This document shows positions 16,931 through 60,599 of a stretch of 64,000 nt of DNA, one piece after another. The translations under genes were made by a program, and so were the position numbers. The notes under the pieces are model-generated. The model saw only the letters and a program-made list of their open reading frames with translations. It searched no databases and was not told the origin of the DNA. The stretch spans positions 62,001-126,000 of the IMG/VR virus record IMGVR_UViG_3300049215_000771; one strand, written 5' to 3'. How positions within the stretch are numbered: the stretch's first letter is position 1; each line of letters starts with the position of its first letter.

Positions 16931-16940
16931 TGCCAAGGAA

Positions 16941-16965: not shown

Positions 16966-16975
16966 GATGGCTGCT

Positions 16976-18836: not shown

Positions 18837-18930
18837 GGAAGCGAATGCCGTCTGGTGTAGGCCGCAGTCTTCAAAACTGTTGTAGGGTGTGAACAACACT
18901 CTAGGAGGGTTCGATTCCCTTTCGCTTCCG
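18837..18930 (+). tRNA. selC: tRNA-Sec-like, anticodon UCA
   Basis: 8-bp acceptor GGAAGCGA/TCGCTTCC, 5-bp T stem with TTCGATT loop, TGGT D-loop, loop CTTCAAA (TCA at 18871-18873), 8-bp variable arm, G73; no encoded CCA. Confidence 0.85.
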
Positions 18931-32888: not shown

Positions 32889-33300
32889 ATTTACGCCCGA
32901 CTATCTGGCGAAGCTGGAGGAACATTACCAGGAATTTCTGGACGATCCTCCTGAAGACACCAGGATCATCCCCGGCCTTCACGACAGCGAACCTTTCAAG
33001 CAGGTGTTCATGGCCGGCGACTGGCTTGCCGACCGCCTGCACGATTCCGGGGCGACGGACGATGAGATTCACAATATCACGTTCGCTCTCGGTCAGCGTT
33101 GTTTCGGTCAGTCTGACCCCTGGGAAGTTGCCAAGGCCAGTCTTCGTCGTTATTGGGAGGGGAAGGCTGACAAGCCTGGAATGAAGCTGGCGGAAGAAAT
33201 TTGTGCTGAAGTTTTTGGCGGCGACATGAAGGAACATATCGACACTCGCCAGCAACGCCGCAATGAGTTGTACGCCAAGTACAGCAAGTTTGTGGAGTGA
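32875..33300 (+). CDS. hypothetical protein
   Basis: 141-aa ORF. Confidence 0.6.
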   Translation: MPRPEFTPDYLAKLEEHYQEFLDDPPEDTRIIPGLHDSEPFKQVFMAGDWLADRLHDSGATDDEIHNITFALGQRCFGQSDPWEVAKASLRRYWEGKADKPGMKLAEEICAEVFGGDMKEHIDTRQQRRNELYAKYSKFVE

Positions 33301-33302
33301 CC

Positions 33303-33614
33303 ATGTTTTCCGCCGAAGATTTCACCGTTCAAAACTCGGAATTTCTCATCCGGCGTGGCTGGCGCATGTGGAGTCGTTCGGACTTGTTCGAGGGCAAGAT
33401 GTTGTTGCTTTGCCCGGTGGATGATTTCAAGAACATCCCCAAGGGAACCAGGATGACGCATATTTGCGGTGGACATGCGGTGAAGGGCAAAGACAAGATC
33501 ACAATGGACCACAAGGGCGGCGTGCTGGCTTACGGCATTTTGCTGGAAGACATCATTGTTCCCGACGAGAACAAGAAGTACCGAAGCATCGACGATTTTT
33601 CCGAACCTGGCTAA
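33303..33614 (+). CDS. hypothetical protein with C-terminal YRSIDD motif
   Basis: Ends ...NKKYRSIDDFSEPG; motif at 33579-33596. Confidence 0.65.
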   Translation: MFSAEDFTVQNSEFLIRRGWRMWSRSDLFEGKMLLLCPVDDFKNIPKGTRMTHICGGHAVKGKDKITMDHKGGVLAYGILLEDIIVPDENKKYRSIDDFSEPG

Positions 33615-33694: not shown

Positions 33695-35356
33695 ATGGGA
33701 CGTAAACTCGAAAAGTCCACCTACCCATCCGGCCACGGCCCGAACGATTTCCAGTGTTTCGGCCCGCCCGCCACCGAAGACGGGAATTTCGACACCTGCA
33801 AGATCGCCGACATGGGTTCCTTCTCCCAAGAGGAGAAAGATTCCAACAAGTATTATCACGCCGCCGTCGTCAAGTCGAAGATCAACGGCAACTACTACAC
33901 CTACTTCGAGTGGGGCCGGGTCGGGGCGTCCAAACCTGCTTTCCAGTTTGTCGAGTGTGGCAGCGAGGCCGACGCCCAGCGGGAATTCGCCGATCAGTGC
34001 CACGAGAAGAACGACAAGCGTGGCGTTTGGACAACCGTGGCGGGCCATCGCACGCTGACGGCCAAACCCAAGAAGGACGTGTATCTCGTCCGCCAACTCG
34101 CCACCCGTTCCACGGGTCTGCCCGATGCCAAAACCATCAAGCACACTGAGGGCGCAAAGCCGAAGCCGAAGCCCGGCAAGCCCGACGATGCCAGCGCTAC
34201 CGACAAGCCGACGAAGAAGGAAGCGAAACCAGCGGCCCCAGCCCGTCGTGCCGATCCAGTCACCAGTAAATTGCTTCAGGATTTGATCGGCGGCACGATC
34301 TCCTACACCCGTGGGAGCATGGCCGACGACTCGATTCCGACGCAAAATGCCATCGACATCGCTCGTGATGTTCTCACCGAGGCCGAGAAGCGACTGTTGA
34401 AGGTCGGCAACAGCCTCGATGACCAGATCGCCGACAAGGAACTTCGCCAGTTGTCCGGGGAACTGTACCGTCGCATCCCGAAGAAGAAGCCGGTTGGGAC
34501 GCCGGACAAGGTGTGGATTCTGTCCAGCGAGAATATCTTCTCCTGGCGGAACGACCTGGACGCCTTCGAGTCGGCGTTGTCGGCCCAGGCCGGCATTGAC
34601 GAACAGGCCGGTCAGGTTGCCGATCCCTTCCACGGCCTGCCCCTCACGATGGAATACATCGACCCGAAAACGGAACTCGGCAAGTTCCTCTACTTCTGGT
34701 GGCCGAAGGCGACGGCCAATCGCCACTACCACCTGAAAGACATGAAGATCAAGAATATGTGGAAGGTGGACCGCTTCGGCGACCCGGAGAAGGTTCGCCG
34801 CTCGCAGGACCGCATCGCCACCGAGATCGGCAAGGCGGCGCTGAAGGAACGGCCCTTGTTCCAGCCGTCCGAACGCTACGATGTTCCCGACATCAACGAG
34901 CGCAAGCTGTTCGGTCAGACCAACACGGCGCTGTTGTTTCACGGCACCCGTTCCGTCAACGTGAAGGGCATCTTGGAGAAGTCGCTGTTGCTGCCGAAGC
35001 AACTGGTCGGCGTTTCCATCAACGGGGCCATGTTTGGCCCTGGTCTGTATTGGGCCGATGACTGGAAGAAGTCGGCAGGCTACACCAGCTTGTCGGGTTC
35101 GCTCTACTCGGCGGGCTATGGCGGGGTTGCCGGTCGCCATGCCTTCATGTTCGCCGCCGATGTCGTCGTGGGGCAGCCACACGTTGCTCCTGGGCCGCAC
35201 GGTTATACCAGCCCGCCGAAGGGCCATCACTGTGTCTTCGGTATGGGCCGCAACCACACCAGCAGCCGCCAGAACAGCGGCGTGGAGAACAACGAGTGGA
35301 TCGTGTTCTCCGGTGAACAGTGCCGTCTCCGCTACCTGGCGGAATTCACGGCGTAA
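33695..35356 (+). CDS. WGR-domain poly(ADP-ribose) polymerase-like ADP-ribosyltransferase
   Basis: FEWGRVG (WGR); helical regulatory segment LSGELYRRIP; catalytic LLFHGT (H), MFGPGLYWAD (Y), NNEWIVF (E). Confidence 0.9.
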   Translation: MGRKLEKSTYPSGHGPNDFQCFGPPATEDGNFDTCKIADMGSFSQEEKDSNKYYHAAVVKSKINGNYYTYFEWGRVGASKPAFQFVECGSEADAQREFADQCHEKNDKRGVWTTVAGHRTLTAKPKKDVYLVRQLATRSTGLPDAKTIKHTEGAKPKPKPGKPDDASATDKPTKKEAKPAAPARRADPVTSKLLQDLIGGTISYTRGSMADDSIPTQNAIDIARDVLTEAEKRLLKVGNSLDDQIADKELRQLSGELYRRIPKKKPVGTPDKVWILSSENIFSWRNDLDAFESALSAQAGIDEQAGQVADPFHGLPLTMEYIDPKTELGKFLYFWWPKATANRHYHLKDMKIKNMWKVDRFGDPEKVRRSQDRIATEIGKAALKERPLFQPSERYDVPDINERKLFGQTNTALLFHGTRSVNVKGILEKSLLLPKQLVGVSINGAMFGPGLYWADDWKKSAGYTSLSGSLYSAGYGGVAGRHAFMFAADVVVGQPHVAPGPHGYTSPPKGHHCVFGMGRNHTSSRQNSGVENNEWIVFSGEQCRLRYLAEFTA

Positions 35357-35417: not shown

Positions 35418-36668
35418 ATGAGAAACGAAGAACAGGCCAAGCAACTCTACATCCCGGAGAAGTTGGCAGTCGGGTTCCAGAAACGTGAAGGAACCTACAA
35501 CGGGATGCTGGCCTACGTCATCTACTACGACAAGACCGGGACGCTTCGGAAAGAAAAATCCTGGCAGTCGTGGCGTGACAAGAAGATCAAGGCGCAGGAG
35601 ATCGAGAACAAGCCCACCGAAGGCTTCGTCCTCAACAAGAAGGTCGGCGGCTACAAGTCGCACTGGAACTTCCGGGACGCCCACGTTCGGGTGTACGATC
35701 CCAGGGGTTTCGAGTTCGAGATTTCAGTCCCGAACCTGTTGTTCATCCTCCGTGAAGGGGCTTGCTCGCCCGGCAAGGGGTTGGAAGGCCAGTTCGTGTA
35801 CGCCTGGGAAGGCACCGAGTTGGTGTTGCTGCCCTGCCATTCGGTGGACTACAAGAACAGCCAGAACTTCACCGACCTTCAGGGCAAGTCGGTCGGGGCG
35901 AAGGAACTGAAGGAAGGGGTGACGTACCTCACGAAAAAGCAGGAGGAACTGACCTACCTGGGCAAGTTCGACTACCACTTCCAGTACAATATCGCCCGCA
36001 ACCACTACTACGGGATGCAGTCGTATGCTCACTACAGGGGCTATGACGTGAACGAGGAGTGGAAGCACCCGCCCAAGAAGGACCAGAAGGGCGTCGTCAA
36101 GCGCTACGTTTTCTGGAATGGCAAGGAATTCGTCTACCTGAACGATCTCAAGTCGCTCGGTACGGCCAAGGACGACGGCGTTCATCCCGACTTCGCCGAG
36201 TTGGTGGACAAGTACAACAAATCCCCGCACGGCAGCAAGGTGGTGAAACTCTTCTTGAAGGAAGTCCCCGGCAAGAAGAACCCCGACCACTGGCAGAACC
36301 AGGAAGAAGACTGGTTCTACGAGGACTCGGACGGCACGTTTGTCGAATGCCAGACCTATTACGCCTGGAACAGCGCCCGCAACAAGCGTGACGTGATCGA
36401 ATACATCCAGGCACAGGCCAAGTGGTATATCGACGAGAAGACCGGCCTGCTGACCAGGAAGGAATACAACGCCATCTGTTATTCCAAGGACGTGGAACAG
36501 AAAAACAGGCAGGAGTACAACCACAAGACCGGGCGATACGAAACCATCAAGAACACGATGGAATGGCGTGAGCCGACGAACTTCCGCCTGTTCGCCCAAA
36601 CCGAGAACGGCGGCAAGCATCGGGCTTGTGGGCCGAGCTACAAGAACGCTTTCGAGAAGGAAAAATAA
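35418..36668 (+). CDS. hypothetical phage protein
   Basis: GGAGG RBS; RVYDPRGFEFEISVPNLLFIL; strong codon bias. Confidence 0.7.
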   Translation: MRNEEQAKQLYIPEKLAVGFQKREGTYNGMLAYVIYYDKTGTLRKEKSWQSWRDKKIKAQEIENKPTEGFVLNKKVGGYKSHWNFRDAHVRVYDPRGFEFEISVPNLLFILREGACSPGKGLEGQFVYAWEGTELVLLPCHSVDYKNSQNFTDLQGKSVGAKELKEGVTYLTKKQEELTYLGKFDYHFQYNIARNHYYGMQSYAHYRGYDVNEEWKHPPKKDQKGVVKRYVFWNGKEFVYLNDLKSLGTAKDDGVHPDFAELVDKYNKSPHGSKVVKLFLKEVPGKKNPDHWQNQEEDWFYEDSDGTFVECQTYYAWNSARNKRDVIEYIQAQAKWYIDEKTGLLTRKEYNAICYSKDVEQKNRQEYNHKTGRYETIKNTMEWREPTNFRLFAQTENGGKHRACGPSYKNAFEKEK

Positions 36669-36785
36669 TGGCCCATCGTGGCTATTACGGTGGCCGAAAG
36701 TCTCGTCTGAAACATTTGACGGGCGAGACTTTCGACACCGCTGCGAAGAAAAAACCAAAACGGCATCCAAACAAGGAGAAAGATC

Positions 36786-37229
36786 GTGGCAAAGACCGAC
36801 AAAAAGACACTCGAACTGATCGAGCAAGTGAAACGGGATCGGGCTGAAATCGCCAAGCTGGACAAGCCCAGCTACAAGACCAACTGCTCGTTCACCTACA
36901 TCGAAGGGAACCGGGGCAGCGCAACCAACATTCACGTCGAAACGGACGTGAAGAAACTGATCCTGATGGCGGCGTTCCTGACGGAGAAGGAAAATTCCTA
37001 CAAGGGAGCGGCCAAGCTGCTCGGTGTGGAGAAGATTCCTGATTTCACCTGGGACGGCTACACCGTCGCCGAATGGCTGCAAGACCTGAAGACCCGCATC
37101 AGCAAGGTTCAGATTTCCAGCAAGAAAGCGAAGCTGGAGGCGCTGGAAGCCCGGCTGAAGAAGATCATCAGCCCGGAACTTCAGGCCGAACTGGAACTGG
37201 CCGATATTGAGAAGGAGTTGGGGGACTAA
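36786..37229 (+). CDS. coiled-coil hypothetical protein
   Basis: AAGGAG RBS; 147 aa. Confidence 0.65.
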   Translation: MAKTDKKTLELIEQVKRDRAEIAKLDKPSYKTNCSFTYIEGNRGSATNIHVETDVKKLILMAAFLTEKENSYKGAAKLLGVEKIPDFTWDGYTVAEWLQDLKTRISKVQISSKKAKLEALEARLKKIISPELQAELELADIEKELGD

Positions 37230-37238
37230 TCTTGCCGC

Positions 37239-37270
37239 ACGACTGCCTGGGGAATTCCCCAGGCAGTCGT
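37239..37270. repeat. 32-bp perfect palindrome
   Basis: ACGACTGCCTGGGGAATTCCCCAGGCAGTCGT; no U-tract. Confidence 0.85.
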
Positions 37271-37352
37271 ATACCCCCTGCGAAAATATGCGAGTTTCCG
37301 AACCTAGTGGATATTCGCCGGTCTTCTGAGTAGAAAGGGGGTTACGTTACCC

Positions 37353-37559
37353 ATGAAAAGCAAGATCGTTCTGGAGCAGCACGGAGCTACGATTAGCCCT
37401 GTGCCAGCGGGCAAGGCACAATATGATGTCGTTGCCCTTCACAACCGCACTCGTCCCTTGATCGGCGAGACTCTGACCGAGGAAGACGTGAAGAAGCTGC
37501 TGGCCGATGCCCGTGGCAACTTGACCGTCGAGATCAAGCCGTCCAAGAAGCGGCGCTAA
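37353..37559 (+). CDS. hypothetical protein
   Basis: 68-aa ORF. Confidence 0.6.
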   Translation: MKSKIVLEQHGATISPVPAGKAQYDVVALHNRTRPLIGETLTEEDVKKLLADARGNLTVEIKPSKKRR

Positions 37560-37602
37560 CCAACACCTTCAACCACCATCCAACAAAAAAGGAACCATCA
37601 AC

Positions 37603-38391
37603 ATGGCTACCGCAGGAGTCCGCCCCGTTGTCGAACAGGTCTGTGATGAGCAGGTCCACAACGGCGGCATGTTCACCGCCCACGATATTACCCTGGAGGT
37701 CCGCAACCGGGGGCATCGTGTGGGGCATCACGAAGTTCGAGACGCCGTTCACGACTATTTCGCTCGTGGCGGTATGGGTGTCGCATATACCCGCACCACT
37801 ATCAGCGTTCCCGCAGGTGGCACGCCCTTCCTGTATCACCGCACCGCCGACGATCCGGCCACTTACGGCAATATCCGTGGCGTCGGCCTGGTCCCCAATC
37901 CGTCCGTCAATACGATCTCCGTTCCGCCCCCGTCCAGTATCGCCAGCACCGATGACGACGAGGAAGACGACGAAGAAGATGAAGACGATGAAGACGACGA
38001 CGTGGTGGACCCCAGCGCCCTGGGCTTGCCCAATTCCGTTGCAGGCGTGGCCGTCGCAAGCCGGCCCAAGACTCACCACAAGTCCAAGTCGGCCAACAAG
38101 AACAAGCTGGTCGGTCGCACTGTTGATGGCCGTGCAACGCTGTCGTTGCCCTCGCCGTTGGTTCGGGCTGCTGGGTTCAATCCTGGCGACAAGGTGTACG
38201 CTACCGGCGTCCCTGATGGCGTGGAAGTCACCTTACACCCGACCAGTGCCGCCCTGTGTCGCAAATACACCGTGGACAACCACGGCCATATCCGCCTGAC
38301 GCAAGGTCTGTTGAAGCGTGCCGGCATTCCTGGTGGCGCTTACGATGTGTCGGGCGACAATACCAAGATCACGGTCAAACTTCACAAGTAA
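37603..38391 (+). CDS. protein with acidic linker and tandem AbrB/MraZ-like C-terminal domains
   Basis: RTVDGRATLSLP..LVRAAGFNPGDKV and YTVDNHGHIRLT..LLKRAGI. Confidence 0.55.
   Translation: MATAGVRPVVEQVCDEQVHNGGMFTAHDITLEVRNRGHRVGHHEVRDAVHDYFARGGMGVAYTRTTISVPAGGTPFLYHRTADDPATYGNIRGVGLVPNPSVNTISVPPPSSIASTDDDEEDDEEDEDDEDDDVVDPSALGLPNSVAGVAVASRPKTHHKSKSANKNKLVGRTVDGRATLSLPSPLVRAAGFNPGDKVYATGVPDGVEVTLHPTSAALCRKYTVDNHGHIRLTQGLLKRAGIPGGAYDVSGDNTKITVKLHK
37951..38001 (+). repeat. low-complexity Asp/Glu tract (17 codons)
   Basis: DDDEEDDEEDEDDEDDD. Confidence 0.85.
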
Positions 38392-38404
38392 CCAGAAAAC
38401 GGGC

Positions 38405-38433
38405 TTTACAACCAGGCTTTGCCGAAGTAATAT
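38405..38433 (+). promoter_or_regulatory. sigma70-type promoter
   Basis: TTTACA-17-TAATAT. Confidence 0.7.
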
Positions 38434-38487
38434 CTGAGCATTGACAGCGAGCCTGGTTGTTATCCCAAATCACAACGGAGGATAGTG

Positions 38488-40164
38488 ATGAGCGACACCG
38501 TTACCCTGACCCTGGAAGAGTTGGAAGAAATCAAGGCCCAACTCGTCGAAATGGATGCCGTTCTCACTCGGCTCCTGGCCCAGCCCCTTGTTTATGCAAC
38601 GGTCGTGAAGGCCGACAACAAGTTTCATCTGGACGCCTTCGAGCAGGGCGACCGGATGTTGGTGATCGACAAGAACCTTCGCAAGCAGAAGAAGTTCTAC
38701 GGCAAGATCGCCAGCCAGGGCGTCGATGACGAGGGCTGGGTCATCTTGGAATATCCCACGGGCGGGCGTGACCGGCTCAACATCGGCCTCAACGGGGAAT
38801 TGCCGCAGGTGAAACTGATCGGCAAGGACGACGGCACCAACGTCGTCATCGCCCATGACGGCAAGCTGTTCGAGGTTCACGGCTTGCCGGGGAAGGAATT
38901 CCATCCGTCGTCCACCGTCAAGGTGGATATGGAAACGAAGCAAATCCACGACGATGCTGGCGTCAGCGCCGCTGGTGACGTGGCCTACATCAAGACCATC
39001 GTGGACGAGGAACACGTCGAAGTGGAGAGCAACGGCCACAGCCGGGTCGTCATCCACGGCGTCAAGGACGAGGAAGGCGAATCCGTCAAGATCGAGCCGG
39101 GCGACCGGGTGATGTTGGATCACACCAACACCATCACCGTCCGTGTTCTCGAAAAGGACAACGCCGACCGCTTCAACCTGATCGAGCAGCAGAACGTCAC
39201 CTGGGACCAGATCGCCGGCCTGGGCGACGTGAAGGAATCGCTCGTCGAAGCGCTGGAACTGCCCTACCAGCACCCGGACATCTTCAAGTTCTACAACAAG
39301 AAGCCGCCGAAGGGCGTGTTGCTCTACGGCCCTCCGGGTTGTGGCAAGACCCTGTGTGCCAAGGCCGCTGCCAACAGCATGGCCCGCATCCACGGCAAGG
39401 AAAACTACCAGTCCGGGTTCATTTACGTCAAAGGCCCGGAATTGTTGAGCAAGTGGGTCGGCCAGACCGAGGCCGAAATCCGCCAACTGTTCGTCCGTGG
39501 CCGGGAACACTACAAGAAGCACGGCTATCCCGCCTTGCTGTTCATCGACGAAGCCGACGCCATCCTCCCGATGAGGGGTTCCGGCAAGTCGTCGGACGTG
39601 GAAAATACCATCGTTCCGATGTTCCTGTCGGAAATGGACGGCCTGGAGGAAGCACACCTGATGGTGTTGCTCGCCACCAACCAGCCGAAGCGTCTGGACC
39701 CCGCCGTGACTCGTGAAGGTCGTGTGGACCGGAAGGTTCGTGTCGGTCGTCCGACCGCCAAGAACGCACACGAATACTTCAACCTGCACATGAAGGGGAT
39801 TCCGGTCGCCGAGGGGTTCGAGGCGGAAGAACTGACGGCCCTGACGATCCGTGACCTGTTCAGCGAGAAGCGGGGTCTGTACACCGTCCAGTACAAGAAG
39901 CAGACCCATCTGTTCAAGCTGGGCGATGCCGTCAGCGGCTCGATGATCGCAACCATCGTGGATCACGCCACGAGCCAGGCCATGAAGCGTGACCTGCACG
40001 CCGGCACGCAAACGGGTGTGAACCACACCGACTTCCAGGACGCCGTGAACGGAATCTTCAAGCATCACGTCGAACTCAACCCGACGTTCGATCTCGAAGA
40101 ATTCTGTGATGCCAACAGCATCAACCGGAACGAGGCGACGTTCTCGAAACTGGTTCACGCATAA
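38488..40164 (+). CDS. AAA+ ATPase, ARC/Mpa (proteasome ATPase)-like
   Basis: N-terminal coiled coil and OB-like region (IEPGDRVMLD), GPPGCGKT, VKGPELLSKWVG, FIDEAD, SSDVENTIVP.FLSEMDG, LDPAVTREGRVD. Confidence 0.8.
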   Translation: MSDTVTLTLEELEEIKAQLVEMDAVLTRLLAQPLVYATVVKADNKFHLDAFEQGDRMLVIDKNLRKQKKFYGKIASQGVDDEGWVILEYPTGGRDRLNIGLNGELPQVKLIGKDDGTNVVIAHDGKLFEVHGLPGKEFHPSSTVKVDMETKQIHDDAGVSAAGDVAYIKTIVDEEHVEVESNGHSRVVIHGVKDEEGESVKIEPGDRVMLDHTNTITVRVLEKDNADRFNLIEQQNVTWDQIAGLGDVKESLVEALELPYQHPDIFKFYNKKPPKGVLLYGPPGCGKTLCAKAAANSMARIHGKENYQSGFIYVKGPELLSKWVGQTEAEIRQLFVRGREHYKKHGYPALLFIDEADAILPMRGSGKSSDVENTIVPMFLSEMDGLEEAHLMVLLATNQPKRLDPAVTREGRVDRKVRVGRPTAKNAHEYFNLHMKGIPVAEGFEAEELTALTIRDLFSEKRGLYTVQYKKQTHLFKLGDAVSGSMIATIVDHATSQAMKRDLHAGTQTGVNHTDFQDAVNGIFKHHVELNPTFDLEEFCDANSINRNEATFSKLVHA

Positions 40165-40183
40165 AAAATGCCGAACCAAACAC

Positions 40184-40224
40184 AAAGACCCGGCGTCTCT
40201 CATGTAGACGCTGGGTCTTTTGTG
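40184..40224 (+). terminator. intrinsic terminator
   Basis: AAAGACCCGGCGTCT...AGACGCTGGGTCTTTTGTGT. Confidence 0.75.
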
Positions 40225-40253
40225 TTTACAAGGCATGATTCTTGGGGTATGAT
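40225..40253 (+). promoter_or_regulatory. sigma70-type promoter
   Basis: TTTACA-17-TATGAT. Confidence 0.7.
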
Positions 40254-40259
40254 ACAGCC

Positions 40260-41489
40260 ATGTTCAATCTCTCCGAGGCGCTGGAGGCTCTGAAGGGCCA
40301 CGACGAGTTTGCAATCAAGGCTTATGACGGCCTGGTTACGCTTGACTACATTTTATGCTTCCCAGGCTCGTTCGATGCCGCAGAAGCCGAAATCGTGGCT
40401 CGTGGAGAGGCACAGGCTCACCGGGATGCAGAAATTCGCCGGAACTGTCGAGGGGTGACTTTCGACGAAAAGACTGGCGAGATCGTGTCTTTGCCGCTGC
40501 ACAAGTTTTTCAACATCGGCCAGACCGAGCAAACGCAGTTCCGCCACTTAACGTCCTGCAAGGCACGGATTTACGAGAAGATGGATGGTTCGATGATCCA
40601 CTTCTTCGTCCACCCGCACCGTCAGGAGTTGCTGGCGTCCACCTGCCGCTCGACGCAAACGCCCCAGGCGCAGGAGTCGCTGGGGCTGGCGAAGAAGAAC
40701 CAGCTTGTCTACGGCAAGATTCTCGCTATCATCGGTGAGGGTTGGACTCCGGTTTTCGAGTACGTCGCTGCACACAACCAGATCGTGGTGCAATATCCAC
40801 GTCCCCGGTTGGTGTATCTGATCTCTCGTCACCGGAAGACGGGCGAGTATAAGTTCCACGAAGGGTTCCCGGATACGGCAACGTATTTTGAGTTTCCCTT
40901 CCAGGACATCAACAACTACTTGGACCGCAAGGAATTCGAGGGCTACGTTTGCCACCTGGAATTCACGGAAGATGTTTCGTGCATCAAGGCGAAGAAGGGT
41001 GACAAGACGATTGTGAAGGCCAAGACGCCCTGGTACTTGGAGCGTCACCGGGCAGTGGATGCCCTGATGAGGCCGACCTACAAGTTGTACCAGGTCGTGT
41101 TCGATGGTGTCATGGACGACCTGTTGCCAACGGCTCCTGATCGGTTCAAGCCGAAGCTGGTTGGAATCTACGAAGAGGCGCAGCGTGATCTACTGAACGA
41201 GCAGCGCCGTGTTGAGAAGTTGTTCGATCTTTCGTTGGCGGCAGTGGAATCCGTTTGGAGCAGGACGTTCTCTCACGGAAAGCTGCCGGAACGCAAGATG
41301 GATCGGGTTCTCCGCAAGGCGTTCGTTGAGTACATCCAGCAGCACTACAAGTCGGATTTCTCTCTGCTGATGGCCCTGTATCTCGGCAATGACCCGTCTC
41401 CCACCATCAAGGACCGATTGATGGAAGGGTACAAGCTAAAGTACCCAAATCGGCTTTTTGCTGATTTGGAAGAAGAAGCTGTCGCATGA
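40260..41489 (+). CDS. T4 Rnl1-like RNA ligase
   Basis: CRGVTFD, LHKFFN, YEKMDGSMI, VFEY, EGYV, KAKTPWY. Confidence 0.88.
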   Translation: MFNLSEALEALKGHDEFAIKAYDGLVTLDYILCFPGSFDAAEAEIVARGEAQAHRDAEIRRNCRGVTFDEKTGEIVSLPLHKFFNIGQTEQTQFRHLTSCKARIYEKMDGSMIHFFVHPHRQELLASTCRSTQTPQAQESLGLAKKNQLVYGKILAIIGEGWTPVFEYVAAHNQIVVQYPRPRLVYLISRHRKTGEYKFHEGFPDTATYFEFPFQDINNYLDRKEFEGYVCHLEFTEDVSCIKAKKGDKTIVKAKTPWYLERHRAVDALMRPTYKLYQVVFDGVMDDLLPTAPDRFKPKLVGIYEEAQRDLLNEQRRVEKLFDLSLAAVESVWSRTFSHGKLPERKMDRVLRKAFVEYIQQHYKSDFSLLMALYLGNDPSPTIKDRLMEGYKLKYPNRLFADLEEEAVA

Positions 41490-41782
41490 AGCTATTTTCG
41501 CCCACGGATGGGCCTTCTTCACAACTAGGGGAAACGGACATGCCTGTATTCCGAGTTTGCAGTGGCGACCTGGATGTTACATTGACCCGGCAAACGCATC
41601 AGGAGGCGGCATCAGACGCTTTCGGTACTCTGCGTAGCGGAAACTTCGACAAGATGAAGCTAGGGGTGATGACCAGCGTGCTGGAGCTAGGCGACCCCGA
41701 CGAGTTGCCAGTGTTCATCGAAACCATGCACCTGGTCAAACTGAATGGACTGAACTACACCAACGCCGCAAGAAAGGGCTAA
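41486..41782 (+). CDS. hypothetical protein
   Basis: 98-aa ORF; start may be 41540. Confidence 0.5.
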   Translation: MKLFSPTDGPSSQLGETDMPVFRVCSGDLDVTLTRQTHQEAASDAFGTLRSGNFDKMKLGVMTSVLELGDPDELPVFIETMHLVKLNGLNYTNAARKG

Positions 41783-41783
41783 C

Positions 41784-42512
41784 ATGCCAATCCAGATTGG
41801 AAACATCGAGAAGAAAACCGACTCCCGCTGGCTCAACCTGTTTGAAGTCGATTATATCGGCATGACAGGCAAACCCGGCAAATGGCAGTTCGCCTCACGC
41901 AATCCCAACCCACAGCCCGGCCCCAATCCCATCACATCCAACGCCGTCATCATCGTTCCCCTCCTCAAAGATGGGCGCAAGCGGAAACTCGTCGTCATCA
42001 AGGAATTTCGCATTCCCCTGGGTGATTACGAGTATGCCGTCCCTGCCGGCCTGTTCGATCCGGGCGAGGAACTTGTCAAAACCGTCAAGCGGGAACTGAA
42101 GGAAGAAACGGGCTTGAAAGGGACGAAGATTCTCGTCACCAGCCCCGCCGTGGTTTCCAGCGCTGGCCTTTCCGATGAAGCCGTCAACTACGTTTTCGTC
42201 GAATGCACTGGCATCCCTGACAACAGTGGCAACGAGGGTACTGAAGACATCACCATCGAAGTTCTGGACATCGAAGGCGTGGCGAAACTCCGACGCTCCG
42301 GGGCCAAGATGTCTTCCAAGTTGTGGCCCATCCTCCTCATGTTCGAGGCGATGGGAAAAATCGCCATTCCCAGGAGCATCAGAGATGAAAATCGTAAGGC
42401 ATTACAACGAGGAAGAACTGAAGCAACTGCTGACCAAAGCGGTGGAGTTTCCGCAGAAGAACCGGCAGTTGAAGGTGAAGGAGATCAAGTTCCGAGTCAC
42501 GGAGCAGCGTGA
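41784..42512 (+). CDS. Nudix hydrolase, ADP-ribose pyrophosphatase-like
   Basis: KEFRIP...PAGLFDPGE.......RELKEETG; SSAGLSDE. Confidence 0.85.
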   Translation: MPIQIGNIEKKTDSRWLNLFEVDYIGMTGKPGKWQFASRNPNPQPGPNPITSNAVIIVPLLKDGRKRKLVVIKEFRIPLGDYEYAVPAGLFDPGEELVKTVKRELKEETGLKGTKILVTSPAVVSSAGLSDEAVNYVFVECTGIPDNSGNEGTEDITIEVLDIEGVAKLRRSGAKMSSKLWPILLMFEAMGKIAIPRSIRDENRKALQRGRTEATADQSGGVSAEEPAVEGEGDQVPSHGAA

Positions 42513-42582
42513 CGCCCACGACCGGCCTGGATTCGGGAACGTCGTCGAAGCGGAGATCGAAGTGGAGGAAGAAGAAAGATGA
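42385..42582 (+). CDS. small hypothetical protein
   Basis: AGGAG RBS; overlaps the Nudix tail; ATGA overlap with the next gene. Confidence 0.5.
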   Translation: MKIVRHYNEEELKQLLTKAVEFPQKNRQLKVKEIKFRVTEQRDAHDRPGFGNVVEAEIEVEEEER

Positions 42583-43580
42583 ACCTAAAAGACAAAGTAC
42601 GAGGAACCTTCCTGGGCCTCGCCATTGGCGATGCCCTGGGGAAAGCTACGGAATCGCTGTCGTTCAACACCATCATGGAGAAGTTCGGCAGGATTACCGA
42701 CTACATCAGCAATCCCCACCACAAGTATTTCGATGGCGCTCCCGTTGGCTCCTGGACTGACGACACTCAGCTTTCTCTTGCTGTGGCTCGTGGCATTGCC
42801 CACAAAGGCGAATTCGACCTGGATGCCATTGCCGAGGAACATTGTGTTGAGTTCATGAAAACTGTGGCTGGTTGGGGCAACACTACCAGAGAAGCCATCG
42901 CCAAGATCGTGGACGGTGGGCACTGGTCCCAGGCCAGCCTCACAGACCAACCCAACCGAGGCGTCGGCAATGGCGTGGCAATGAAGGTTGCCCCTGTTGG
43001 TTGCTACATGGCCTTGACCAACCCCGAATGCAACAACCCGCAGTGGGGCGAGGATGTGAAAAAGCTGATGAAGCTGGCGACTATGACGCACTTCACCAGC
43101 ATGGCGATTACTTCGGGATTCGCCCAAACCTTCGCCGTGTTCAAGTGCATGATGTCGGACCCCGAAAACTTCGATGTCAAGTCCTTCATCCGAACCATCA
43201 ACGGCGCAGGCATGATGGGGCGGCGGTACTTGTTCAAGACCATTACCCAGGATGACATTGCCAACAGGTTCGGCCTGTTGGAAAAATACGACGAGTACCC
43301 GCCCGAACGCATCATCGCCGAGTTGAAGGGTAGCTGCTACGTCTACGAGTCGCTGCCGTTCACCTTCATGTTCTTCGTCCGTAACCCACACAGTATTGAA
43401 ACGCTGTACGATGTGGTGACGGCGGGCGGGGACACGGACACCAATGGCTCCATGCTCGGCGCTCTCCTGGGCGCTCTGCACGGCACAGACATCTTTCCCG
43501 AACATCTGGTTGACGGCCTCCGTGAACGTGAGATGGTCATGGAAGTCGCCGACAGGATGTACGACAAGTTGAAGGGCTAA
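42579..43580 (+). CDS. ADP-ribosylglycohydrolase (DraG/ARH family)
   Basis: GLAIGDALG, WTDDTQ, GNGVAMK.AP, GGDTDT. Confidence 0.92.
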   Translation: MNLKDKVRGTFLGLAIGDALGKATESLSFNTIMEKFGRITDYISNPHHKYFDGAPVGSWTDDTQLSLAVARGIAHKGEFDLDAIAEEHCVEFMKTVAGWGNTTREAIAKIVDGGHWSQASLTDQPNRGVGNGVAMKVAPVGCYMALTNPECNNPQWGEDVKKLMKLATMTHFTSMAITSGFAQTFAVFKCMMSDPENFDVKSFIRTINGAGMMGRRYLFKTITQDDIANRFGLLEKYDEYPPERIIAELKGSCYVYESLPFTFMFFVRNPHSIETLYDVVTAGGDTDTNGSMLGALLGALHGTDIFPEHLVDGLREREMVMEVADRMYDKLKG

Positions 43581-45570: not shown

Positions 45571-46002
45571 ATGATGGACGTTTGCAACAACCGGAAGGCC
45601 CGCTATGATTACCATATCCTCGATACTGTCGAGGCGGGGATCGTATTGCAGGGCACTGAAGTCAAGGCTCTCCGGGCCAAACTTGCCTCATTGGAAGGTT
45701 CTTACGCCGTCATTCGTGACGGCGAAGTGTGGATGATTGGCTCTCATGTTGAAGAGTACGACCACGGCAACCATCACAACCACAACCCCAAGCGGGAGCG
45801 GAAGCTGTTGGTCAAGCGACACGACATCAAGAAACTTTCTGGTGAGGTTCGTGTGAAGGGAAAAACCCTCGTGCCCCTTCGCATTTACTTCTCCGGGCGC
45901 TGGGCCAAGGTGGAACTGGCGCTGGCGCAGGGCAAGCAGACGCACGATAAACGGCAAACCCTGAAAGAAAGGGAGCAGCGTAAGGAAATGAAGGGCTATT
46001 GA
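45571..46002 (+). CDS. smpB: SsrA-binding protein
   Basis: NRKARYDY, EAGIVLQGTEVK, RKLL, LVPL.IYF, GKQTHDKR. Confidence 0.95.
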   Translation: MMDVCNNRKARYDYHILDTVEAGIVLQGTEVKALRAKLASLEGSYAVIRDGEVWMIGSHVEEYDHGNHHNHNPKRERKLLVKRHDIKKLSGEVRVKGKTLVPLRIYFSGRWAKVELALAQGKQTHDKRQTLKEREQRKEMKGY

Positions 46003-46475
46003 TGGAGAATATGGATCGAATTGTCGAGGTATGTCAGCGCCTCAATTTTGAATCGGATAACTGGAATCTACGCTACGAATACGCTCAGTATTTTGAAGAT
46101 GCTGACATGGTGGAAGAATGCCTCGCCCAAAGGTGGATGGCCGACAATCAGAAATGTCCGGGTCCACCATGCGTTCAAGAAGCCCACCCAGGCGAGGCGA
46201 CCTGGTTTTCTGCGGAAAATAGGGAAGATATGCGGTGGTCTTTCCCTCATTTCGTTAAATGCGACAAGGTTGATAGGAAATGGTGTCTTCCTGTTGATAT
46301 TTTCAAAAGGCTGGATGGATTCATCACGGATCGGCGGGATGGAGGGTTTCACAACAAGTGGGCAAAATCTTGGAACAGTCGGACGGATGCGGAACTAGCC
46401 CTCGCTGCGGCCTTGCCACGAAGAAAAAGAAAGTTTCGGTCGATTGATGACAATTGGAGGGCGTCAGGTTGTTAG
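45999..46475 (+). CDS. hypothetical protein with C-terminal FRSIDD motif (TAG stop)
   Basis: Ends ...RKRKFRSIDDNWRASGC; motif at 46434-46451. Confidence 0.6.
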   Translation: MMENMDRIVEVCQRLNFESDNWNLRYEYAQYFEDADMVEECLAQRWMADNQKCPGPPCVQEAHPGEATWFSAENREDMRWSFPHFVKCDKVDRKWCLPVDIFKRLDGFITDRRDGGFHNKWAKSWNSRTDAELALAAALPRRKRKFRSIDDNWRASGC

Positions 46476-54883: not shown

Positions 54884-55579
54884 ATGCAAGTCTGGCTTGA
54901 ACCTATTGAGATGGTCGGGGCATCAGTTCCGATCCCCGCCGTTCTCACACGAATTCAACTGGCGTGTTGTGATGCCGGGTTTCAAAGTCAGAAACTCAAC
55001 CAAATTCTCAATGAAGCCTGCATGGTCATGCCCGGCAATCTCGAACAAGCCAAGGGCAACTACGATCCTAGCGTTTACGCTATGGAGGTTATACAAACCG
55101 AGCGTATTCGAGTGGGATTTTTCGACAGGCTCCGTGATGCTCTCGATGAAGTTGCCCAGGCCGCTGGGGACACGATTGATTGGTGTCTGTTATTCATGGA
55201 TTACGACATCCATTTCGCTCGGCATGACGCCTTCGTGAACGGCCTGAAATGTTTTCCGTACTTGGAATGCTATCTTGTTGTCGCCGACGCCGACTCGCCA
55301 TTGATGAACAACTGGAGGAATCCACGGAAATTATCGGTACAAGTTATCACAGAGGCCACACTGCAAACAATGGCCCCCTCGATGGGTTTCCAGAATCCGA
55401 TTGGAATTCAAGGCATATTTGCGCAACAACCATTGCCGGCCCCAGCAGCGAGTGGTAATATGCCCGCTGTCTCGCCTTCTGGTTGGCTGAATGACTATGA
55501 AGACCCTGAAGAAGTGGAAGAAGTGGTCAAGCCACAACCAAAGCCCAAGACAAAATATCGGAGCATCGACGACCCGTGA
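54884..55579 (+). CDS. hypothetical protein with C-terminal YRSIDD motif
   Basis: Ends ...PKTKYRSIDDP; motif at 55556-55573. Confidence 0.65.
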   Translation: MQVWLEPIEMVGASVPIPAVLTRIQLACCDAGFQSQKLNQILNEACMVMPGNLEQAKGNYDPSVYAMEVIQTERIRVGFFDRLRDALDEVAQAAGDTIDWCLLFMDYDIHFARHDAFVNGLKCFPYLECYLVVADADSPLMNNWRNPRKLSVQVITEATLQTMAPSMGFQNPIGIQGIFAQQPLPAPAASGNMPAVSPSGWLNDYEDPEEVEEVVKPQPKPKTKYRSIDDP

Positions 55580-59392: not shown

Positions 59393-59463
59393 GCCCCGTT
59401 GGTACATTGGCTGTGCCGTGGCCTCTAAAGCCACAGAAGTCGGTTCGATTCCGGCACGGGGTA
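59393..59463 (+). tRNA. amber suppressor tRNA, anticodon CUA (copy 1)
   Basis: GCCCCGT/ACGGGGT acceptor, GTGGC-CTCTAAA-GCCAC (CTA at 59425-59427), GTCGG-TTCGATT-CCGGC, A73. Confidence 0.85.
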
Positions 59464-59466
59464 CAA

Positions 59467-59539
59467 GCCCTGGTAGCTCAGTGGTCAGAGCGGTTGACTC
59501 TAAATCAACGTGTCGTGGGTTCGATCCCCACCCAGGGCG
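59467..59539 (+). tRNA. amber suppressor tRNA, anticodon CUA (copy 2)
   Basis: GCCCTGG/CCAGGGC acceptor, GCTC/GAGC D stem, GTTGA-CTCTAAA-TCAAC (CTA at 59500-59502), GTGGG-TTCGATC-CCCAC, G73. Confidence 0.88.
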
Positions 59540-59560
59540 CTGCATATCATAGGGAGGTTC

Positions 59561-59665: not shown

Positions 59666-60262
59666 ATGAGACTGAGATTCCAACACGACAATGTGGAGGA
59701 TGGCCAGGGCTGCGGTACAATTCTAAGTTTGGAACCACAGTTCCGTACCATCTACACAATGGGTAACGGGTATAGCACACGCAGTAGGTACGATGGAAAC
59801 ATTGTTACCCTGCCGTGGCCACATTTGATCTTTGTGTTTCGCTACACGAAGGTTGAGGGCGGCTATATGTATGGTGGTTTGTACGGCAACGGCCTGCGGG
59901 TGTTGTTGAAATCGGAGCCACTGCGCTCTTTCGATGACCTGGTGGCATACGCTCCTACCGAACATCACGGTGGAGGGCTGGCGTGTACCGATCATGGATG
60001 GGATAATTCCTTGTTCAAAAACCCACAGGAGTTGATGGGAACGATTCTGGAGATTTGGTGGGGGAGCGCCCATCACATGCGTCCGCCTCTCGACATTTCT
60101 GCATGGAAGAAGATGTCGGTAGAAGAAGTCGTAACCTACAAGTGGGGAGAAGTTGCCAAACTTTCTACCTTGCTGCCGTTTTCTGGCGAACTTATCGACA
60201 AGGACGTTGGTATTCTTCCAAGTGTGTTGAAAAAAGGACCGAAATTGTATGGCCGCAGATGA
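59666..60262 (+). CDS. prokaryotic E2 (family D)-like protein, paralog of 55590..56207
   Basis: LEPQFRTIY...LPWPHLIFVFRY...LAC. Confidence 0.4.
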   Translation: MRLRFQHDNVEDGQGCGTILSLEPQFRTIYTMGNGYSTRSRYDGNIVTLPWPHLIFVFRYTKVEGGYMYGGLYGNGLRVLLKSEPLRSFDDLVAYAPTEHHGGGLACTDHGWDNSLFKNPQELMGTILEIWWGSAHHMRPPLDISAWKKMSVEEVVTYKWGEVAKLSTLLPFSGELIDKDVGILPSVLKKGPKLYGRR

Positions 60263-60599
60263 TTGGGTTGGGAAACGCTTTCCAGAACCGCCTGAACGCC
60301 TCACCCGTCCATACTTTGACCCTGACCATGTTGGTCGGGGTTATTGTATGTACTGCCGTGACGATCACGACAGTCCCGGACCAGTTTTCATGTGGCGAGA
60401 TAACAACACCCTTCTTCTCAAGCCAGGCCACATGAACTGTGTTTTGTGTGGGCAGCGGTACTTCGCCGAACTTGAAGACTTGGAATTGTTGTGTGGTTTT
60501 CCGCCCACGATGAACAACATCTACGATTTCGAGACGATCTACGCCCGGTGGAAGGCTCGCTACCGTTCCATTGACGACCCCTGGCAATCCAGTTCTTAG
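60249..60599 (+). CDS. Zn-binding hypothetical protein with C-terminal YRSIDD motif (TAG stop)
   Basis: CMYC, CVLC; ends ...KARYRSIDDPWQSSS; motif at 60561-60578. Confidence 0.65.
   Translation: MAADDWVGKRFPEPPERLTRPYFDPDHVGRGYCMYCRDDHDSPGPVFMWRDNNTLLLKPGHMNCVLCGQRYFAELEDLELLCGFPPTMNNIYDFETIYARWKARYRSIDDPWQSSS

What the first reader, a model, noticed from the sequence alone, without database searches (positions are those of the whole stretch)
38488..40164. ARC/Mpa-like proteasomal ATPase without a recognisable HbYX tail
Seen: coiled-coil, OB-like and AAA layout with the ARC-like SSDVENTIVP.FLSEMDG segment; the C-terminus is ...SKLVHA. Known: ARC/Mpa unfolds Pup/UBact-tagged substrates and docks on the 20S core through a penultimate Tyr (GQYL). 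Inference: a phage unfoldase that competes for tagged substrates, works without the core, or partners another protease. It is a candidate reader of the RSIDD tag.
Basis: partly seen in the sequence, partly recalled or inferred. Interest (0 to 1): 0.6.

Follow-up and report, generated by a model that had tools for sequence, protein, structure and literature searches.

The report
Megaphage ARC-like unfoldase lacking docking tail
A 533-kb phage from moss microbiomes encodes a complete look-alike of the bacterial proteasome ATPase ARC/Mpa that belongs to a large virus-only sister branch, lacks the tail that plugs into the proteasome, and so most likely unfolds proteins on its own.

Summary
Window 38488-40164 (+) encodes a 558-aa AAA protein with the full ARC/Mpa layout: a short heptad helix, two OB-type barrels, a classic AAA motor and a C-terminal beta-grasp-like module. 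It ends where Mpa's beta-grasp ends, so the flexible GQYL/HbYX tail is missing. The best full-length profile is TIGR03689 (330 bits, below cut-off). The AlphaFold model aligns to M. tuberculosis Mpa residues 97-589/597 (Z 31-32).

In a tree it lies in a virus-only clade (100/99) that is sister to cellular ARC/Mpa, apart from PAN, Cdc48 and FtsH. None of 120 family members has a penultimate Tyr/Phe, against 61 of 75 cellular ARCs. The tail-less actinobacterial ARCs sampled come from genomes without 20S genes.

The 532.7-kb phage has no Pup ligase/Dop, no 20S and no Lon; its ClpP-like gene scores as a head-maturation protease. The gene has its own promoter-like and terminator-like signals and appears in moss metatranscriptomes.

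Best reading: a protease-independent unfoldase/remodeller. The RSIDD tag is real (33 ORFs, protein-level selection), but the ATPase family is far wider than the tag and no link was shown. This is a new viral variant of a known kind.

The parts
38405..38433 (+). promoter-like site (TTTACA, 17 nt, TAATAT), 55 nt upstream of the start codon
   Evidence: Consensus match only; the region as a whole is not enriched (5 found, 4.0 expected). An RNA-run contig starts at 38463.
38488..40164 (+). ARC/Mpa-like AAA ATPase gene (558 aa plus stop)
38512..38577 (+). N-terminal helix, residues 9-30, about three heptads, followed by the nearly invariant junction Pro33
   Evidence: the heptad was read directly from the sequence
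38584..39153 (+). beta-rich N-domain, residues 33-222: first OB-type barrel with extra strands (33 to about 158) and second OB barrel (160-222)
   Evidence: aligns to Mpa from residue 97; Rpt only from about 160; weak Prot_ATP_ID_OB_C at 165-221
39190..39852 (+). classic-clade AAA module, residues 235-455
   Evidence: PF00004, 115 bits, 277-420
39328..39351 (+). Walker A GPPGCGKT (281-288); two homologues carry an intein between K287 and T288
39451..39462 (+). pore-1 loop KWVG (322-325); G325 is invariant
39535..39558 (+). Walker B LLFIDEAD (350-357); D354 and E355 are invariant
39589..39642 (+). ARC-type segment SSDVENTIVPMFLSEMDG (368-385)
39667..39732 (+). sensor-1 Asn398 and the arginine-finger stretch TREGRVDR (R409 and R412 invariant)
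39853..40161 (+). lid plus C-terminal beta-grasp-like module (456-558): hairpin 463-477, helices 484-542 with the conserved FDLE[ED]FCD motif, last strand 551-554. It ends without a flexible tail.
   Evidence: model 557/558 aligns to Mpa 589/597
40184..40220 (+). terminator-like hairpin (15-bp stem, 8 G-C pairs, T-rich tail), 20 nt after the stop
   Evidence: no RNA-run contig crosses it
37603..38391 (+). conserved upstream neighbour X (262 aa): winged-helix-like N-domain, disordered acidic linker, MraZ/AbrB-like C-domain; probable DNA-binding regulator
33695..35356 (+). WGR + PARP-catalytic-domain protein, part of the syntenic block kept in relatives
40242..41489 (+). T4 Rnl1-type RNA ligase, downstream neighbour with its own promoter-like site (40225-40253)
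41784..42512 (+). NUDIX hydrolase, part of the syntenic block
42579..43580 (+). ADP-ribosylglycohydrolase, part of the syntenic block

Best explanation
The gene encodes a virus-specific relative of the bacterial proteasomal ATPase ARC/Mpa. Shown: it has the whole ARC body plan (short N-terminal coiled-coil helix, two stacked OB-type barrels, a classic AAA motor with intact Walker A/B, pore loop, sensor-1 and arginine fingers, and a C-terminal beta-grasp-like module). It lacks the flexible C-terminal GQYL/HbYX tail that Mpa inserts into the 20S alpha-ring. Inferred: it assembles as a hexameric ring, captures substrates at the coiled-coil/OB face and threads them through the pore using ATP. It works without a docked peptidase, as an unfoldase, disassemblase or remodeller of host or phage proteins during infection. 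This would parallel what is proposed for ARC in Corynebacterium glutamicum, which lacks a proteasome. It appears to be transcribed as its own unit and to be expressed in moss microbiomes. Its substrates and recognition signal are unknown.
For: Family and architecture: TIGR03689 330 bits over query 10-539, versus PAN 185 and one CDC48 domain 199. The model has pLDDT 88. Mpa is the top structural match: TM 0.76-0.80 and Z 31-32 over Mpa 97-589/597. Phylogeny: ARC plus viral clade 100/100, viral clade 100/99, cellular ARC 87/98, PAN 100/99. Catalytic residues are invariant in 62 homologues, and inteins sit in the P-loop of two homologues. No docking tail: 0 of 120 viral-family members have a penultimate Y/F, against 61 of 75 cellular ARCs (50 GQYL) and 8 of 8 PANs. 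Five of five sampled actinobacterial genomes with tail-less ARC have no PF00227 hit, and six of six with tailed ARC have 2-4. GQYL is the 20S-binding motif, and C. glutamicum ARC is proposed to unfold pupylated ferritin without degradation (PMC8223512). The phage genome has no PF03136, PF00227 or PF05362 match, and only a 13.8-bit sub-threshold Pup match. Its ClpP-like ORF matches head-maturation protease PHROGs. Own promoter-like and terminator-like sites. RNA-run contigs at 99% identity or more cover 38463-40135 and almost none of the flanks in three metatranscriptomes.
Against: No biochemical data; hexamer formation and unfolding are inferred from homology. Absence of a tail does not exclude other contacts with a peptidase: Mpa's beta-grasp also touches the 20S (title and abstract of PMC9599533, listed), and Cpa competes for the 20S without GQYL (PMC8223512). 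Tail-less ARC paralogues in Verrucomicrobiota and Nitrospira sit in genomes that do have PF00227 hits. The host is unknown, so a host 20S cannot be excluded. The RNA evidence comes from contigs of runs chosen because they hold this gene, and DNA carry-over cannot be ruled out.
Confidence: 0.6

Rival explanations
1. Proteasome hijacker: the phage ATPase docks on a host 20S core through contacts other than HbYX (for example its beta-grasp-like module) and redirects host proteasomal degradation or competes for Pup/UBact-tagged substrates.
For: The beta-grasp-like module is retained and conserved. Cpa competes for the 20S without GQYL (PMC8223512). Tail-less ARC paralogues coexist with PF00227 hits in Verrucomicrobiota and Nitrospira genomes. 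Moss microbiomes contain proteasome-bearing phyla (my own knowledge, not tested).
Against: 0 of 120 family members have any penultimate aromatic. The clade is virus-only and sister to all cellular ARC rather than a recent capture from a proteasome-bearing host. It occurs in phages from 44 kb to about 670 kb. The phage carries no Pup, PafA/Dop or 20S. The coiled coil is about three heptads long, much shorter than I recall for Mpa's Pup-binding coil (my own knowledge).
Confidence: 0.1
2. Reader of the RSIDD tag: the ATPase recognises the C-terminal [KR]-rich-[YWHF]RSIDD[PDE]W motif carried by 33 phage proteins and unfolds, extracts or delivers them. This would be a cis-encoded analogue of Pup tagging.
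For: The tag is real, terminal and under protein-level selection. It is conserved on an orthologue in the closest relative, L191. AAA unfoldases commonly read terminal degrons (general knowledge). Two tagged ORFs lie within 10 kb of the gene.
Against: Five ATPase-positive viral records, two of them 98-100% complete, have no RSIDD coding. Syntenic loci of relatives at 63% and 45% identity show no such tag in about 22 kb each. The family has over 120 members while the tag pattern hit only 8 stretches on 6 contigs in IMG/VR. Tag-bearing records lack the ATPase, but all are fragments. No physical evidence exists.
Confidence: 0.07
3. Component of the conserved ADP-ribosylation/RNA-repair block: the unfoldase acts on proteins modified or trapped by the neighbouring PARP-like enzyme, or otherwise serves that counter-defence module.
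For: The order PARP/WGR, X, ATPase, Rnl1, NUDIX, ARH is kept from 81% down to 45% ATPase identity on different megaphage contigs.
Against: Synteny is confined to the close megaphage sub-clade; none of the IMG/VR relatives shows these neighbours within 10 kb. The ATPase has its own promoter-like and terminator-like signals. Adjacency in large phage genomes often reflects timing rather than function. No mechanistic link was tested.
Confidence: 0.1
4. Partner of the phage's own ClpP-family peptidase, forming a phage-encoded chaperone-protease.
For: A ClpP-family ORF exists at genome 249796-250302 (-).
Against: It scores best against head-maturation protease PHROGs and lies 150 kb away. ARC-type classic AAA proteins are not known to dock on ClpP, which uses IGF/LGF loops of ClpX/ClpA (general knowledge; not tested here).
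Confidence: 0.03

Closest known systems
Mpa/ARC (proteasome-associated ATPase, TIGR03689; M. tuberculosis Mpa, PDB 5kwa, 7px9)
   Same: Same domain order and fold from the coiled-coil/OB junction to the end of the beta-grasp (Z 31-32, 28-32% identity). Same ARC-type motifs. Nearest clade in the tree.
   Different: No GQYL tail. The N-terminal helix has about 22 residues and there is no long disordered N-terminus. About 40 extra residues lie in the first barrel region. It scores 330 bits against a 505-bit cut-off. It falls in a virus-only sister clade, with no pup, pafA/dop or prcAB in the genome.
ARC of actinobacteria without a proteasome (Corynebacterium, Bifidobacteriaceae, Actinomycetaceae)
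   Same: ARC body without the HbYX-type tail, in a genome without 20S genes. A protease-independent unfolding role is proposed for C. glutamicum ARC (PMC8223512).
   Different: Those ARCs nest inside actinobacterial ARC. C. glutamicum, at least, still works with Pup/PafA/Dop (PMC8223512; not checked for the other sampled genomes). The phage has no Pup ligase and only a sub-threshold Pup match.
PAN / Rpt1-6 (archaeal and eukaryotic proteasomal ATPases)
   Same: Coiled coil with a junction proline, an OB ring and a classic AAA motor. Structural matches Z 25-26 from residue about 160 onward.
   Different: PAN/Rpt have a single OB and an HbYX tail (MFG/MYG in 8 of 8 sampled). They form a separate clade (100/99).
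Cdc48/p97/VAT and Cpa
   Same: Classic AAA domain, 33-37% identical over about 255-265 residues. These are unfoldases that often act without a docked protease.
   Different: Double AAA and a different N-domain (general knowledge). The high whole-sequence PDB scores come from two AAA domains each matching the single one here. Outside the ARC clade in the tree.

Membership tests
ARC/Mpa (TIGR03689 pup_AAA equivalog) | Score at or above the curated cut-off of the equivalog model | tested here: not met
   329.8 bits against a cut-off of 504.75, although the match is full-length (query 10-539, profile 22-494 of 512) and is the best family.
ARC/Mpa (TIGR03689 pup_AAA equivalog) | N-terminal coiled-coil helix joined to the OB ring through a conserved proline | tested here: met
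   Helix 9-30 with an a/d heptad and the nearly invariant Pro33. It is much shorter than I recall for Mpa, and pairing into coiled coils was not modelled.
ARC/Mpa (TIGR03689 pup_AAA equivalog) | Two tandem OB-type barrels between the coiled coil and the AAA module | tested here: met
   Model 32-222 aligns to Mpa from residue 97; Rpt/PAN chains align only from about 160. The first barrel region is about 40 residues longer than in Mpa.
ARC/Mpa (TIGR03689 pup_AAA equivalog) | Single classic-clade AAA module with intact Walker A/B, pore-1 loop, sensor-1 and arginine fingers | tested here: met
   PF00004 at 115 bits; the motifs are located and invariant across 62 homologues.
ARC/Mpa (TIGR03689 pup_AAA equivalog) | C-terminal beta-grasp domain | tested here: met
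   The alignment runs to Mpa 589/597 with model residue 557/558; hairpin 463-477 and terminal strand 551-554.
ARC/Mpa (TIGR03689 pup_AAA equivalog) | C-terminal GQYL / HbYX-type 20S-docking motif | tested here: not met
   The protein ends ...KLVHA. 0 of 120 family members have a penultimate Y/F, against 61 of 75 cellular ARCs.
ARC/Mpa (TIGR03689 pup_AAA equivalog) | Genomic company of pup, pafA/dop and prcAB | tested here: not met
   No PF03136 or PF00227 match; only a 13.8-bit Pup match, below the cut-off, in the 532.7-kb phage genome. The host genome is not available.
ARC/Mpa (TIGR03689 pup_AAA equivalog) | Placement inside the cellular ARC clade | tested here: not met
   It falls in a virus-only clade (100/99) that is sister to cellular ARC (87/98), within an ARC super-clade (100/100).
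ARC/Mpa (TIGR03689 pup_AAA equivalog) | Binds Pup and unfolds pupylated substrates; activates the 20S | not testable with these tools
   Needs biochemistry.
PAN (TIGR01242) | Single OB, HbYX tail, score above cut-off | tested here: not met
   168-185 bits against a 500-bit cut-off; double OB; no HbYX; separate clade.
Cdc48/FtsH-type generic AAA | Tandem AAA with a Cdc48 N-domain, or an M41 peptidase domain | tested here: not met
   One AAA module only and no peptidase domain; outside these groups in the tree.

The most novel reading that the evidence does not exclude
The megaphage runs a cis-encoded tagging system. Dozens of small phage proteins carry an invariant terminal RSIDD motif, and this tail-less ARC-like ring is the machine that reads the motif and unfolds, extracts or delivers the tagged proteins. 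This would be a viral counterpart of Pup-Mpa in which the tag is written in the gene rather than ligated.
Probability: 0.07. Interest if true: 0.85.

Novelty: new variant of a known kind. Interest (0 to 1): 0.52.

Why it matters
ARC/Mpa is usually discussed as the regulatory cap of the bacterial Pup-proteasome system. Here a large, deep, virus-only sister clade keeps the entire ARC body but never the 20S-docking tail, in genomes with no Pup ligase and no 20S. Members sit on phage contigs from 44 kb to about 670 kb. This indicates that the ARC architecture has a long history as a stand-alone unfoldase in viruses. It provides natural tail-less variants for studying what the OB/coiled-coil face and the beta-grasp do apart from proteasome docking. 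It also points to an unexplored layer of protein remodelling in huge-phage infection. The gene appears to be expressed in moss microbiomes. PHROGs has no full-length family for it, so it is missing from functional phage annotation.

Tried and rejected
- Complex prediction with ATPase residues 1-232 (two copies) plus the 45-residue RSIDD tail of the window 60249-60596 ORF gave no verdict (score 0.00, controls not run). This is evidence neither for nor against binding.
- GenBank/INPHARED phages by tblastn: no full-length relative. There were only AAA-plus-C-terminal matches in two Brevundimonas phages annotated 'proteasome-associated ATPase' (38% over residues 252-539) and a 462-kb uncultured phage (32%).
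- Literature searches (huge phages + proteasome; jumbo phage + Mpa/Pup; 'proteasome-associated ATPase' + phage; RSIDD) found nothing on a phage ARC or on the tag.
It was not tested for binding.
- The ClpP-like ORF as a partner was rejected because it matches head-maturation protease PHROGs.
- PADLOC gave only generic AAA-domain matches to IetA/TRIP13.
- Tag-side co-occurrence is inconclusive: the tag-bearing IMG/VR records lack the ATPase, but their estimated completeness is only 6-87%.
- Host identification was not achieved. The MAG labels on L086-L088 (Gammaproteobacteria, Patescibacteria, Rikenellaceae) are probably mis-binned phage contigs.
- The large representative-protein search was not used, because the word search and family scans settled the family.
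- No alternative genetic code was applied.
Full report
OBSERVATION. The ORF is real. It runs from window 38488 to 40164 on the + strand and encodes 558 aa. An in-frame GTG lies one codon upstream, but homologues start at the same Met-Ser-Asp, so 38488 is the start. The window is bases 62001-126000 of a 532,729-bp IMG/VR virus record that CheckV rates 100% complete. That record has a large-terminase match, a ClpP-family head-maturation protease and 56 tRNA genes. It is therefore a huge phage. Sequencing runs that hold the gene are moss, plant and soil metagenomes.

WHAT IT IS. Pfam sees only the AAA domain (PF00004, 115 bits, residues 277-420) and a weak proteasomal OB C-terminal domain at 165-221. 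NCBIfam gives a full-length match to TIGR03689 (pup_AAA, the ARC/Mpa equivalog). The score is 329.8 bits over query 10-539 and profile 22-494 of 512, which is below the 504.75-bit cut-off. That compares with 168-185 bits for PAN models and 199 bits for one domain of CDC48. Against PDB sequences, p97 and Cdc48 score highest only because both of their AAA domains match the single one here. Mpa matches in one stretch of 337-380 residues.

An AlphaFold2 model built on 62 homologues has mean pLDDT 88. It shows these elements:
- a helix at residues 9-30;
- a beta-rich region at 33-222;
- the AAA module;
- a lid carrying a beta-hairpin at 463-477;
- helices to residue 542;
- a last strand at 551-554.

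Foldseek puts M. tuberculosis Mpa chains first, with TM 0.76-0.80 normalised to the target, about 470 columns and 28-30% identity. Rpt subunits follow with about 375 columns. VIA-align gives Z 31-32, with model residues 32-558 aligned to Mpa 97-589/597. Rpt, PAN and p97 chains align only from about residue 160 or 230. The ARC-specific double OB and the C-terminal beta-grasp are therefore both present. The chain stops where Mpa's beta-grasp stops. The first barrel region is about 40 residues longer than in Mpa. The N-terminal helix carries a clean a/d heptad (L12, I15, L19, M22, L26, L29), but only about three heptads, followed by the nearly invariant Pro33. Walker A (281-288), the pore loop KWVG (322-325), Walker B (350-357), sensor-1 Asn398 and Arg409/Arg412 are invariant or nearly so.

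RELATIVES AND PHYLOGENY. The word-based protein search found more than 120 full-length homologues at 41-83% identity. All come from metagenomes, and many sit on contigs of 100-670 kb. GenBank phages hold no full-length relative, and PHROGs has only AAA-domain matches to families of unknown function. In GTDB species genomes, the three best hits are on a 513-kb contig of a 'Gammaproteobacteria' MAG, a 152-kb contig of a 'Patescibacteria' MAG and an 8-kb 'Rikenellaceae' contig. After those come genuine ARC/Mpa of Actinomycetota, Nitrospirota, Myxococcota, Poribacteria and Verrucomicrobiota at 33-40% identity.

I extracted the full ORFs. As outgroups I added PAN from Nanoarchaeota genomes, FtsH and a Cdc48.

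The first tree was a quick IQ-TREE run on 87 rows under LG+C20+F+G4 (PMSF), rooted on FtsH. It gave these SH-aLRT supports:
- ARC plus viral sequences: 99;
- cellular ARC: 97;
- an all-viral clade of 42 rows, including the three MAG contigs: 97;
- PAN: 99.

The second tree was a careful LG+G4 run. I left out 13 rows: the long-branch rows L020, L017, L006, L018, L019, L022, L023, L025, L087, Cdc48 D1 and fam_P0099, plus L145 and L122. It gave these ultrafast bootstrap / SH-aLRT supports:
- ARC super-clade: 100/100;
- viral clade (32 rows): 100/99;
- cellular ARC (27 rows): 87/98;
- PAN: 100/99.

Two IMG/VR loci (L013, L016) nest inside cellular ARC and do end in GQYL. They are recent captures or host DNA. 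One row (L127 in G062, a Verrucomicrobiota MAG) is flagged as unpublished.

THE MISSING TAIL. None of the 120 family members has Tyr or Phe at the penultimate position. The tails are short and mostly end in Ala, Lys or Val. Among 75 cellular ARC ORFs with a complete 3' end, 61 have a penultimate Y/F: 50 GQYL, and the rest GHYL, GTYL, GTFL, GPYL, GQYV, GHYF or NPFA. All 8 PANs end in MFG, FFG or MYG.

The 14 tail-less cellular ARCs are from these lineages:
- Corynebacterium (4);
- Actinomycetaceae (Bowdeniella, two loci; Actinotignum; Mobiluncus);
- Bifidobacteriaceae (1);
- Brevibacterium (1; a 782-aa ORF, possibly over-extended);
- Verrucomicrobiota (2);
- a Nitrospira paralogue (2).

A PF00227 search of 14 of these genomes found no 20S-family gene in the five actinobacterial genomes with tail-less ARC. 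It found 2-4 matches in all six genomes with tailed ARC. The three tail-less Verrucomicrobiota and Nitrospira genomes do have matches. The literature identifies GQYL as the 20S-insertion motif. It also states that C. glutamicum lacks prcBA and that its ARC is proposed to unfold pupylated ferritin without degrading it (PMC8223512).

PARTNERS IN THE PHAGE. Searches of the 532.7-kb genome gave these results:
- Pup ligase/Dop (PF03136): no match.
- Proteasome subunits (PF00227): no match.
- Lon_C (PF05362): no match.
- Pup (PF05639): only a 13.8-bit match, below threshold.
- ClpP family (PF00574): one ORF at genome 249796-250302 (-). It matches head-maturation protease PHROGs best.

CONTEXT. The order PARP/WGR, X, ATPase, Rnl1-type RNA ligase, NUDIX, then ADP-ribosylglycohydrolase is kept on other megaphage contigs. 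The ATPases there are 81%, about 65%, about 63% and 45% identical. The PARP-X-ATPase part is also seen on the contig of the intein-bearing near-identical homologue, which ends at the ATPase. None of the more distant IMG/VR relatives shows these neighbours.

Protein X (window 37603-38391) has 48 homologues, all metagenomic. It folds as a winged-helix-like domain, a disordered acidic linker and a two-repeat MraZ/AbrB-like domain. Its matches to PadR/Fur-type regulators and MraZ are weak. I read it as a DNA-binding regulator rather than an adaptor.

A promoter-like site (38405-38433) precedes the gene. A 15-bp-stem hairpin with a T-rich tail (40184-40220) follows the stop, and another promoter-like site (40225-40253) serves the ligase. 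These are consensus matches only.

I laid contigs of three moss or plant metatranscriptome runs on window 36600-42550. At 99% identity or more, the contigs cover 38463-40135 and almost nothing of the flanks, while a DNA run covers all 30 bins. This fits a separately transcribed, expressed gene. However, the runs were selected for holding this gene, contigs cannot show strand or level, and DNA carry-over is not excluded.

THE RSIDD TAG. Thirty-three ORFs of the phage contain exactly R-S-I-D-D. The motif is preceded by an aromatic residue or His and a Lys/Arg run, and is usually followed by Pro/Asp/Glu and Trp. In 30 of the 33 it lies 0-13 residues before the stop. In two it is near the N-terminus. 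The reversed motif occurs once. Arg and Ser switch between codon families and Ile uses three codons, so selection acts on the peptide and not on the DNA. The carriers are unrelated small proteins of 65-231 aa.

The tag recurs at ORF ends in a few other IMG/VR contigs. It is also kept on the orthologue upstream of PARP in the closest relative. One relative at 65% identity has two ORFs ending in R-[LF]-I-[ND]-E-P-F-E-P-S-L, possibly a variant.

Evidence against a dedicated reader role:
- Five ATPase-positive viral records, including a complete 183-kb genome with terminal repeats and a 98%-complete 44-kb genome, have no RSIDD coding.
- Syntenic loci of relatives at 63% and 45% identity show none in about 22 kb each.

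The tag-bearing records lack the ATPase, but their estimated completeness is only 6-87%. The one complex prediction gave no verdict and is not evidence. Other readers, such as the capsid interior or the head-maturation protease, are equally open.

MECHANISM. Shown: the ARC architecture, intact motor residues, absence of the docking tail across the whole clade, absence of 20S and of a Pup ligase in the phage, and membership of a virus-only sister clade. Inferred: a hexameric ring that threads substrates and works without a docked peptidase, by analogy with ARC of Corynebacterium, which has no proteasome. Unknown: the substrates, the recognition signal and the host. Rival readings (host-20S hijacking through other contacts, RSIDD reader, function tied to the ADP-ribosylation/RNA-repair block, partnership with the ClpP-like protease) are listed with their evidence.

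NOVELTY. Automated pipelines already label some members 'proteasome-associated ATPase', so the resemblance itself is not new. I found no paper on it. What is new is a large virus-only ARC sister clade that uniformly lacks the 20S-docking motif and the Pup context. I rate this a new variant of a known kind, of moderate interest.

Noticed in passing
whole phage genome (window = genome 62001-126000); in the window, ORFs 33297-33614, 45999-46475, 54884-55579 and 60249-60599: 33 otherwise unrelated small ORFs (65-231 aa) carry an invariant RSIDD motif with the consensus [KR]-run, [YWHF], RSIDD, [PDE], W. In 30 of them it lies 0-13 residues before the stop. Codons vary freely, so selection is at the protein level, and the reversed motif occurs once. 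Function is unknown: it could be a targeting, packaging, cleavage, degron or modification signal.
   Followed up: partly
L082 4782-5258 and 5221-5721; L167/L169/L171 (one 146-kb IMG/VR contig), L173, L170, L168; L191 5880-6191: The same KKYRSIDDPWE-type ORF ends occur in a few other viral contigs and on the orthologue in the closest relative. One relative has two ORFs ending R[LF]I[ND]EPFEPSL, possibly a diverged form of the tag.
   Followed up: partly
window 18837-18930, 59393-59464 and 59467-59540; genome 491736-491826 (-): Suppressor-type tRNAs: one with anticodon tca (reads UGA) and three with cta (read UAG), among 56 tRNA genes in the genome and no tmRNA. Two further ARAGORN calls have four-base anticodon loops (genome 13184-13278 and 55504-55586). 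This hints at stop-codon recoding in part of the genome. The ATPase ORF is open in table 11.
   Followed up: no
window 33695-35356, 40242-41489, 41784-42512, 42579-43580: A phage-encoded WGR+PARP-domain protein, a T4 Rnl1-type RNA ligase, a NUDIX hydrolase and an ADP-ribosylglycohydrolase form a block around the ATPase. The block is conserved on other megaphage contigs down to 45% ATPase identity. A second RNA ligase (PF09414), an HD_4 protein and a sigma-70-like protein lie upstream in relatives.
   Followed up: partly
window 37603-38391: Protein X is the always-adjacent upstream neighbour, with 48 metagenome-only homologues and no Pfam family. It combines a winged-helix-like domain, a poly-Asp/Glu linker of variable length and a two-repeat MraZ/AbrB-like domain. 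It is probably a DNA-binding regulator.
   Followed up: yes
homologues P0008 (754 aa, locus L191 10001-12265) and P0103 (897 aa): Two homologues carry a LAGLIDADG/Hom_end-type intein at the same site, inside Walker A between K287 and T288 of GPPGCGK|T.
   Followed up: partly
genome 249796-250302 (-), locus L190 1501-2007: This ClpP-family ORF scores best as a head-maturation protease. It lies next to an aminoacyl-tRNA-synthetase-like 517-aa ORF (248120-249673) and a few kb from four RSIDD-tagged ORFs (238-247 kb).
   Followed up: partly
L086 (513-kb contig), L087 (152-kb contig), L088 (8-kb contig): Contigs filed in MAGs of Gammaproteobacteria, Patescibacteria and Rikenellaceae carry full-length members of the viral ATPase clade. 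They are probably phage contigs binned into bacterial genomes.
   Followed up: partly
L091 / L181 (Nanoarchaeota MAG, 541-aa ORF): An ARC-like protein in a Nanoarchaeota MAG branches at the base of cellular ARC (SH-aLRT 87). No PAN reached threshold in that genome, whereas PAN is present in 38 of 41 genomes sampled from the phylum. Origin (archaeal, viral or contaminant) is not resolved.
   Followed up: no
whole record: IMG/VR classes the 532.7-kb record as a 'provirus', while the protein collection records a 673,178-bp contig for the same gene. About 140 kb was therefore trimmed as putative host.
   Followed up: no
contig of homologue P0004 (gene at locus coordinates 16727-17182; no DNA held): A close relative's contig encodes an SmpB-family protein a few kb downstream of the ATPase block.
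   Followed up: no
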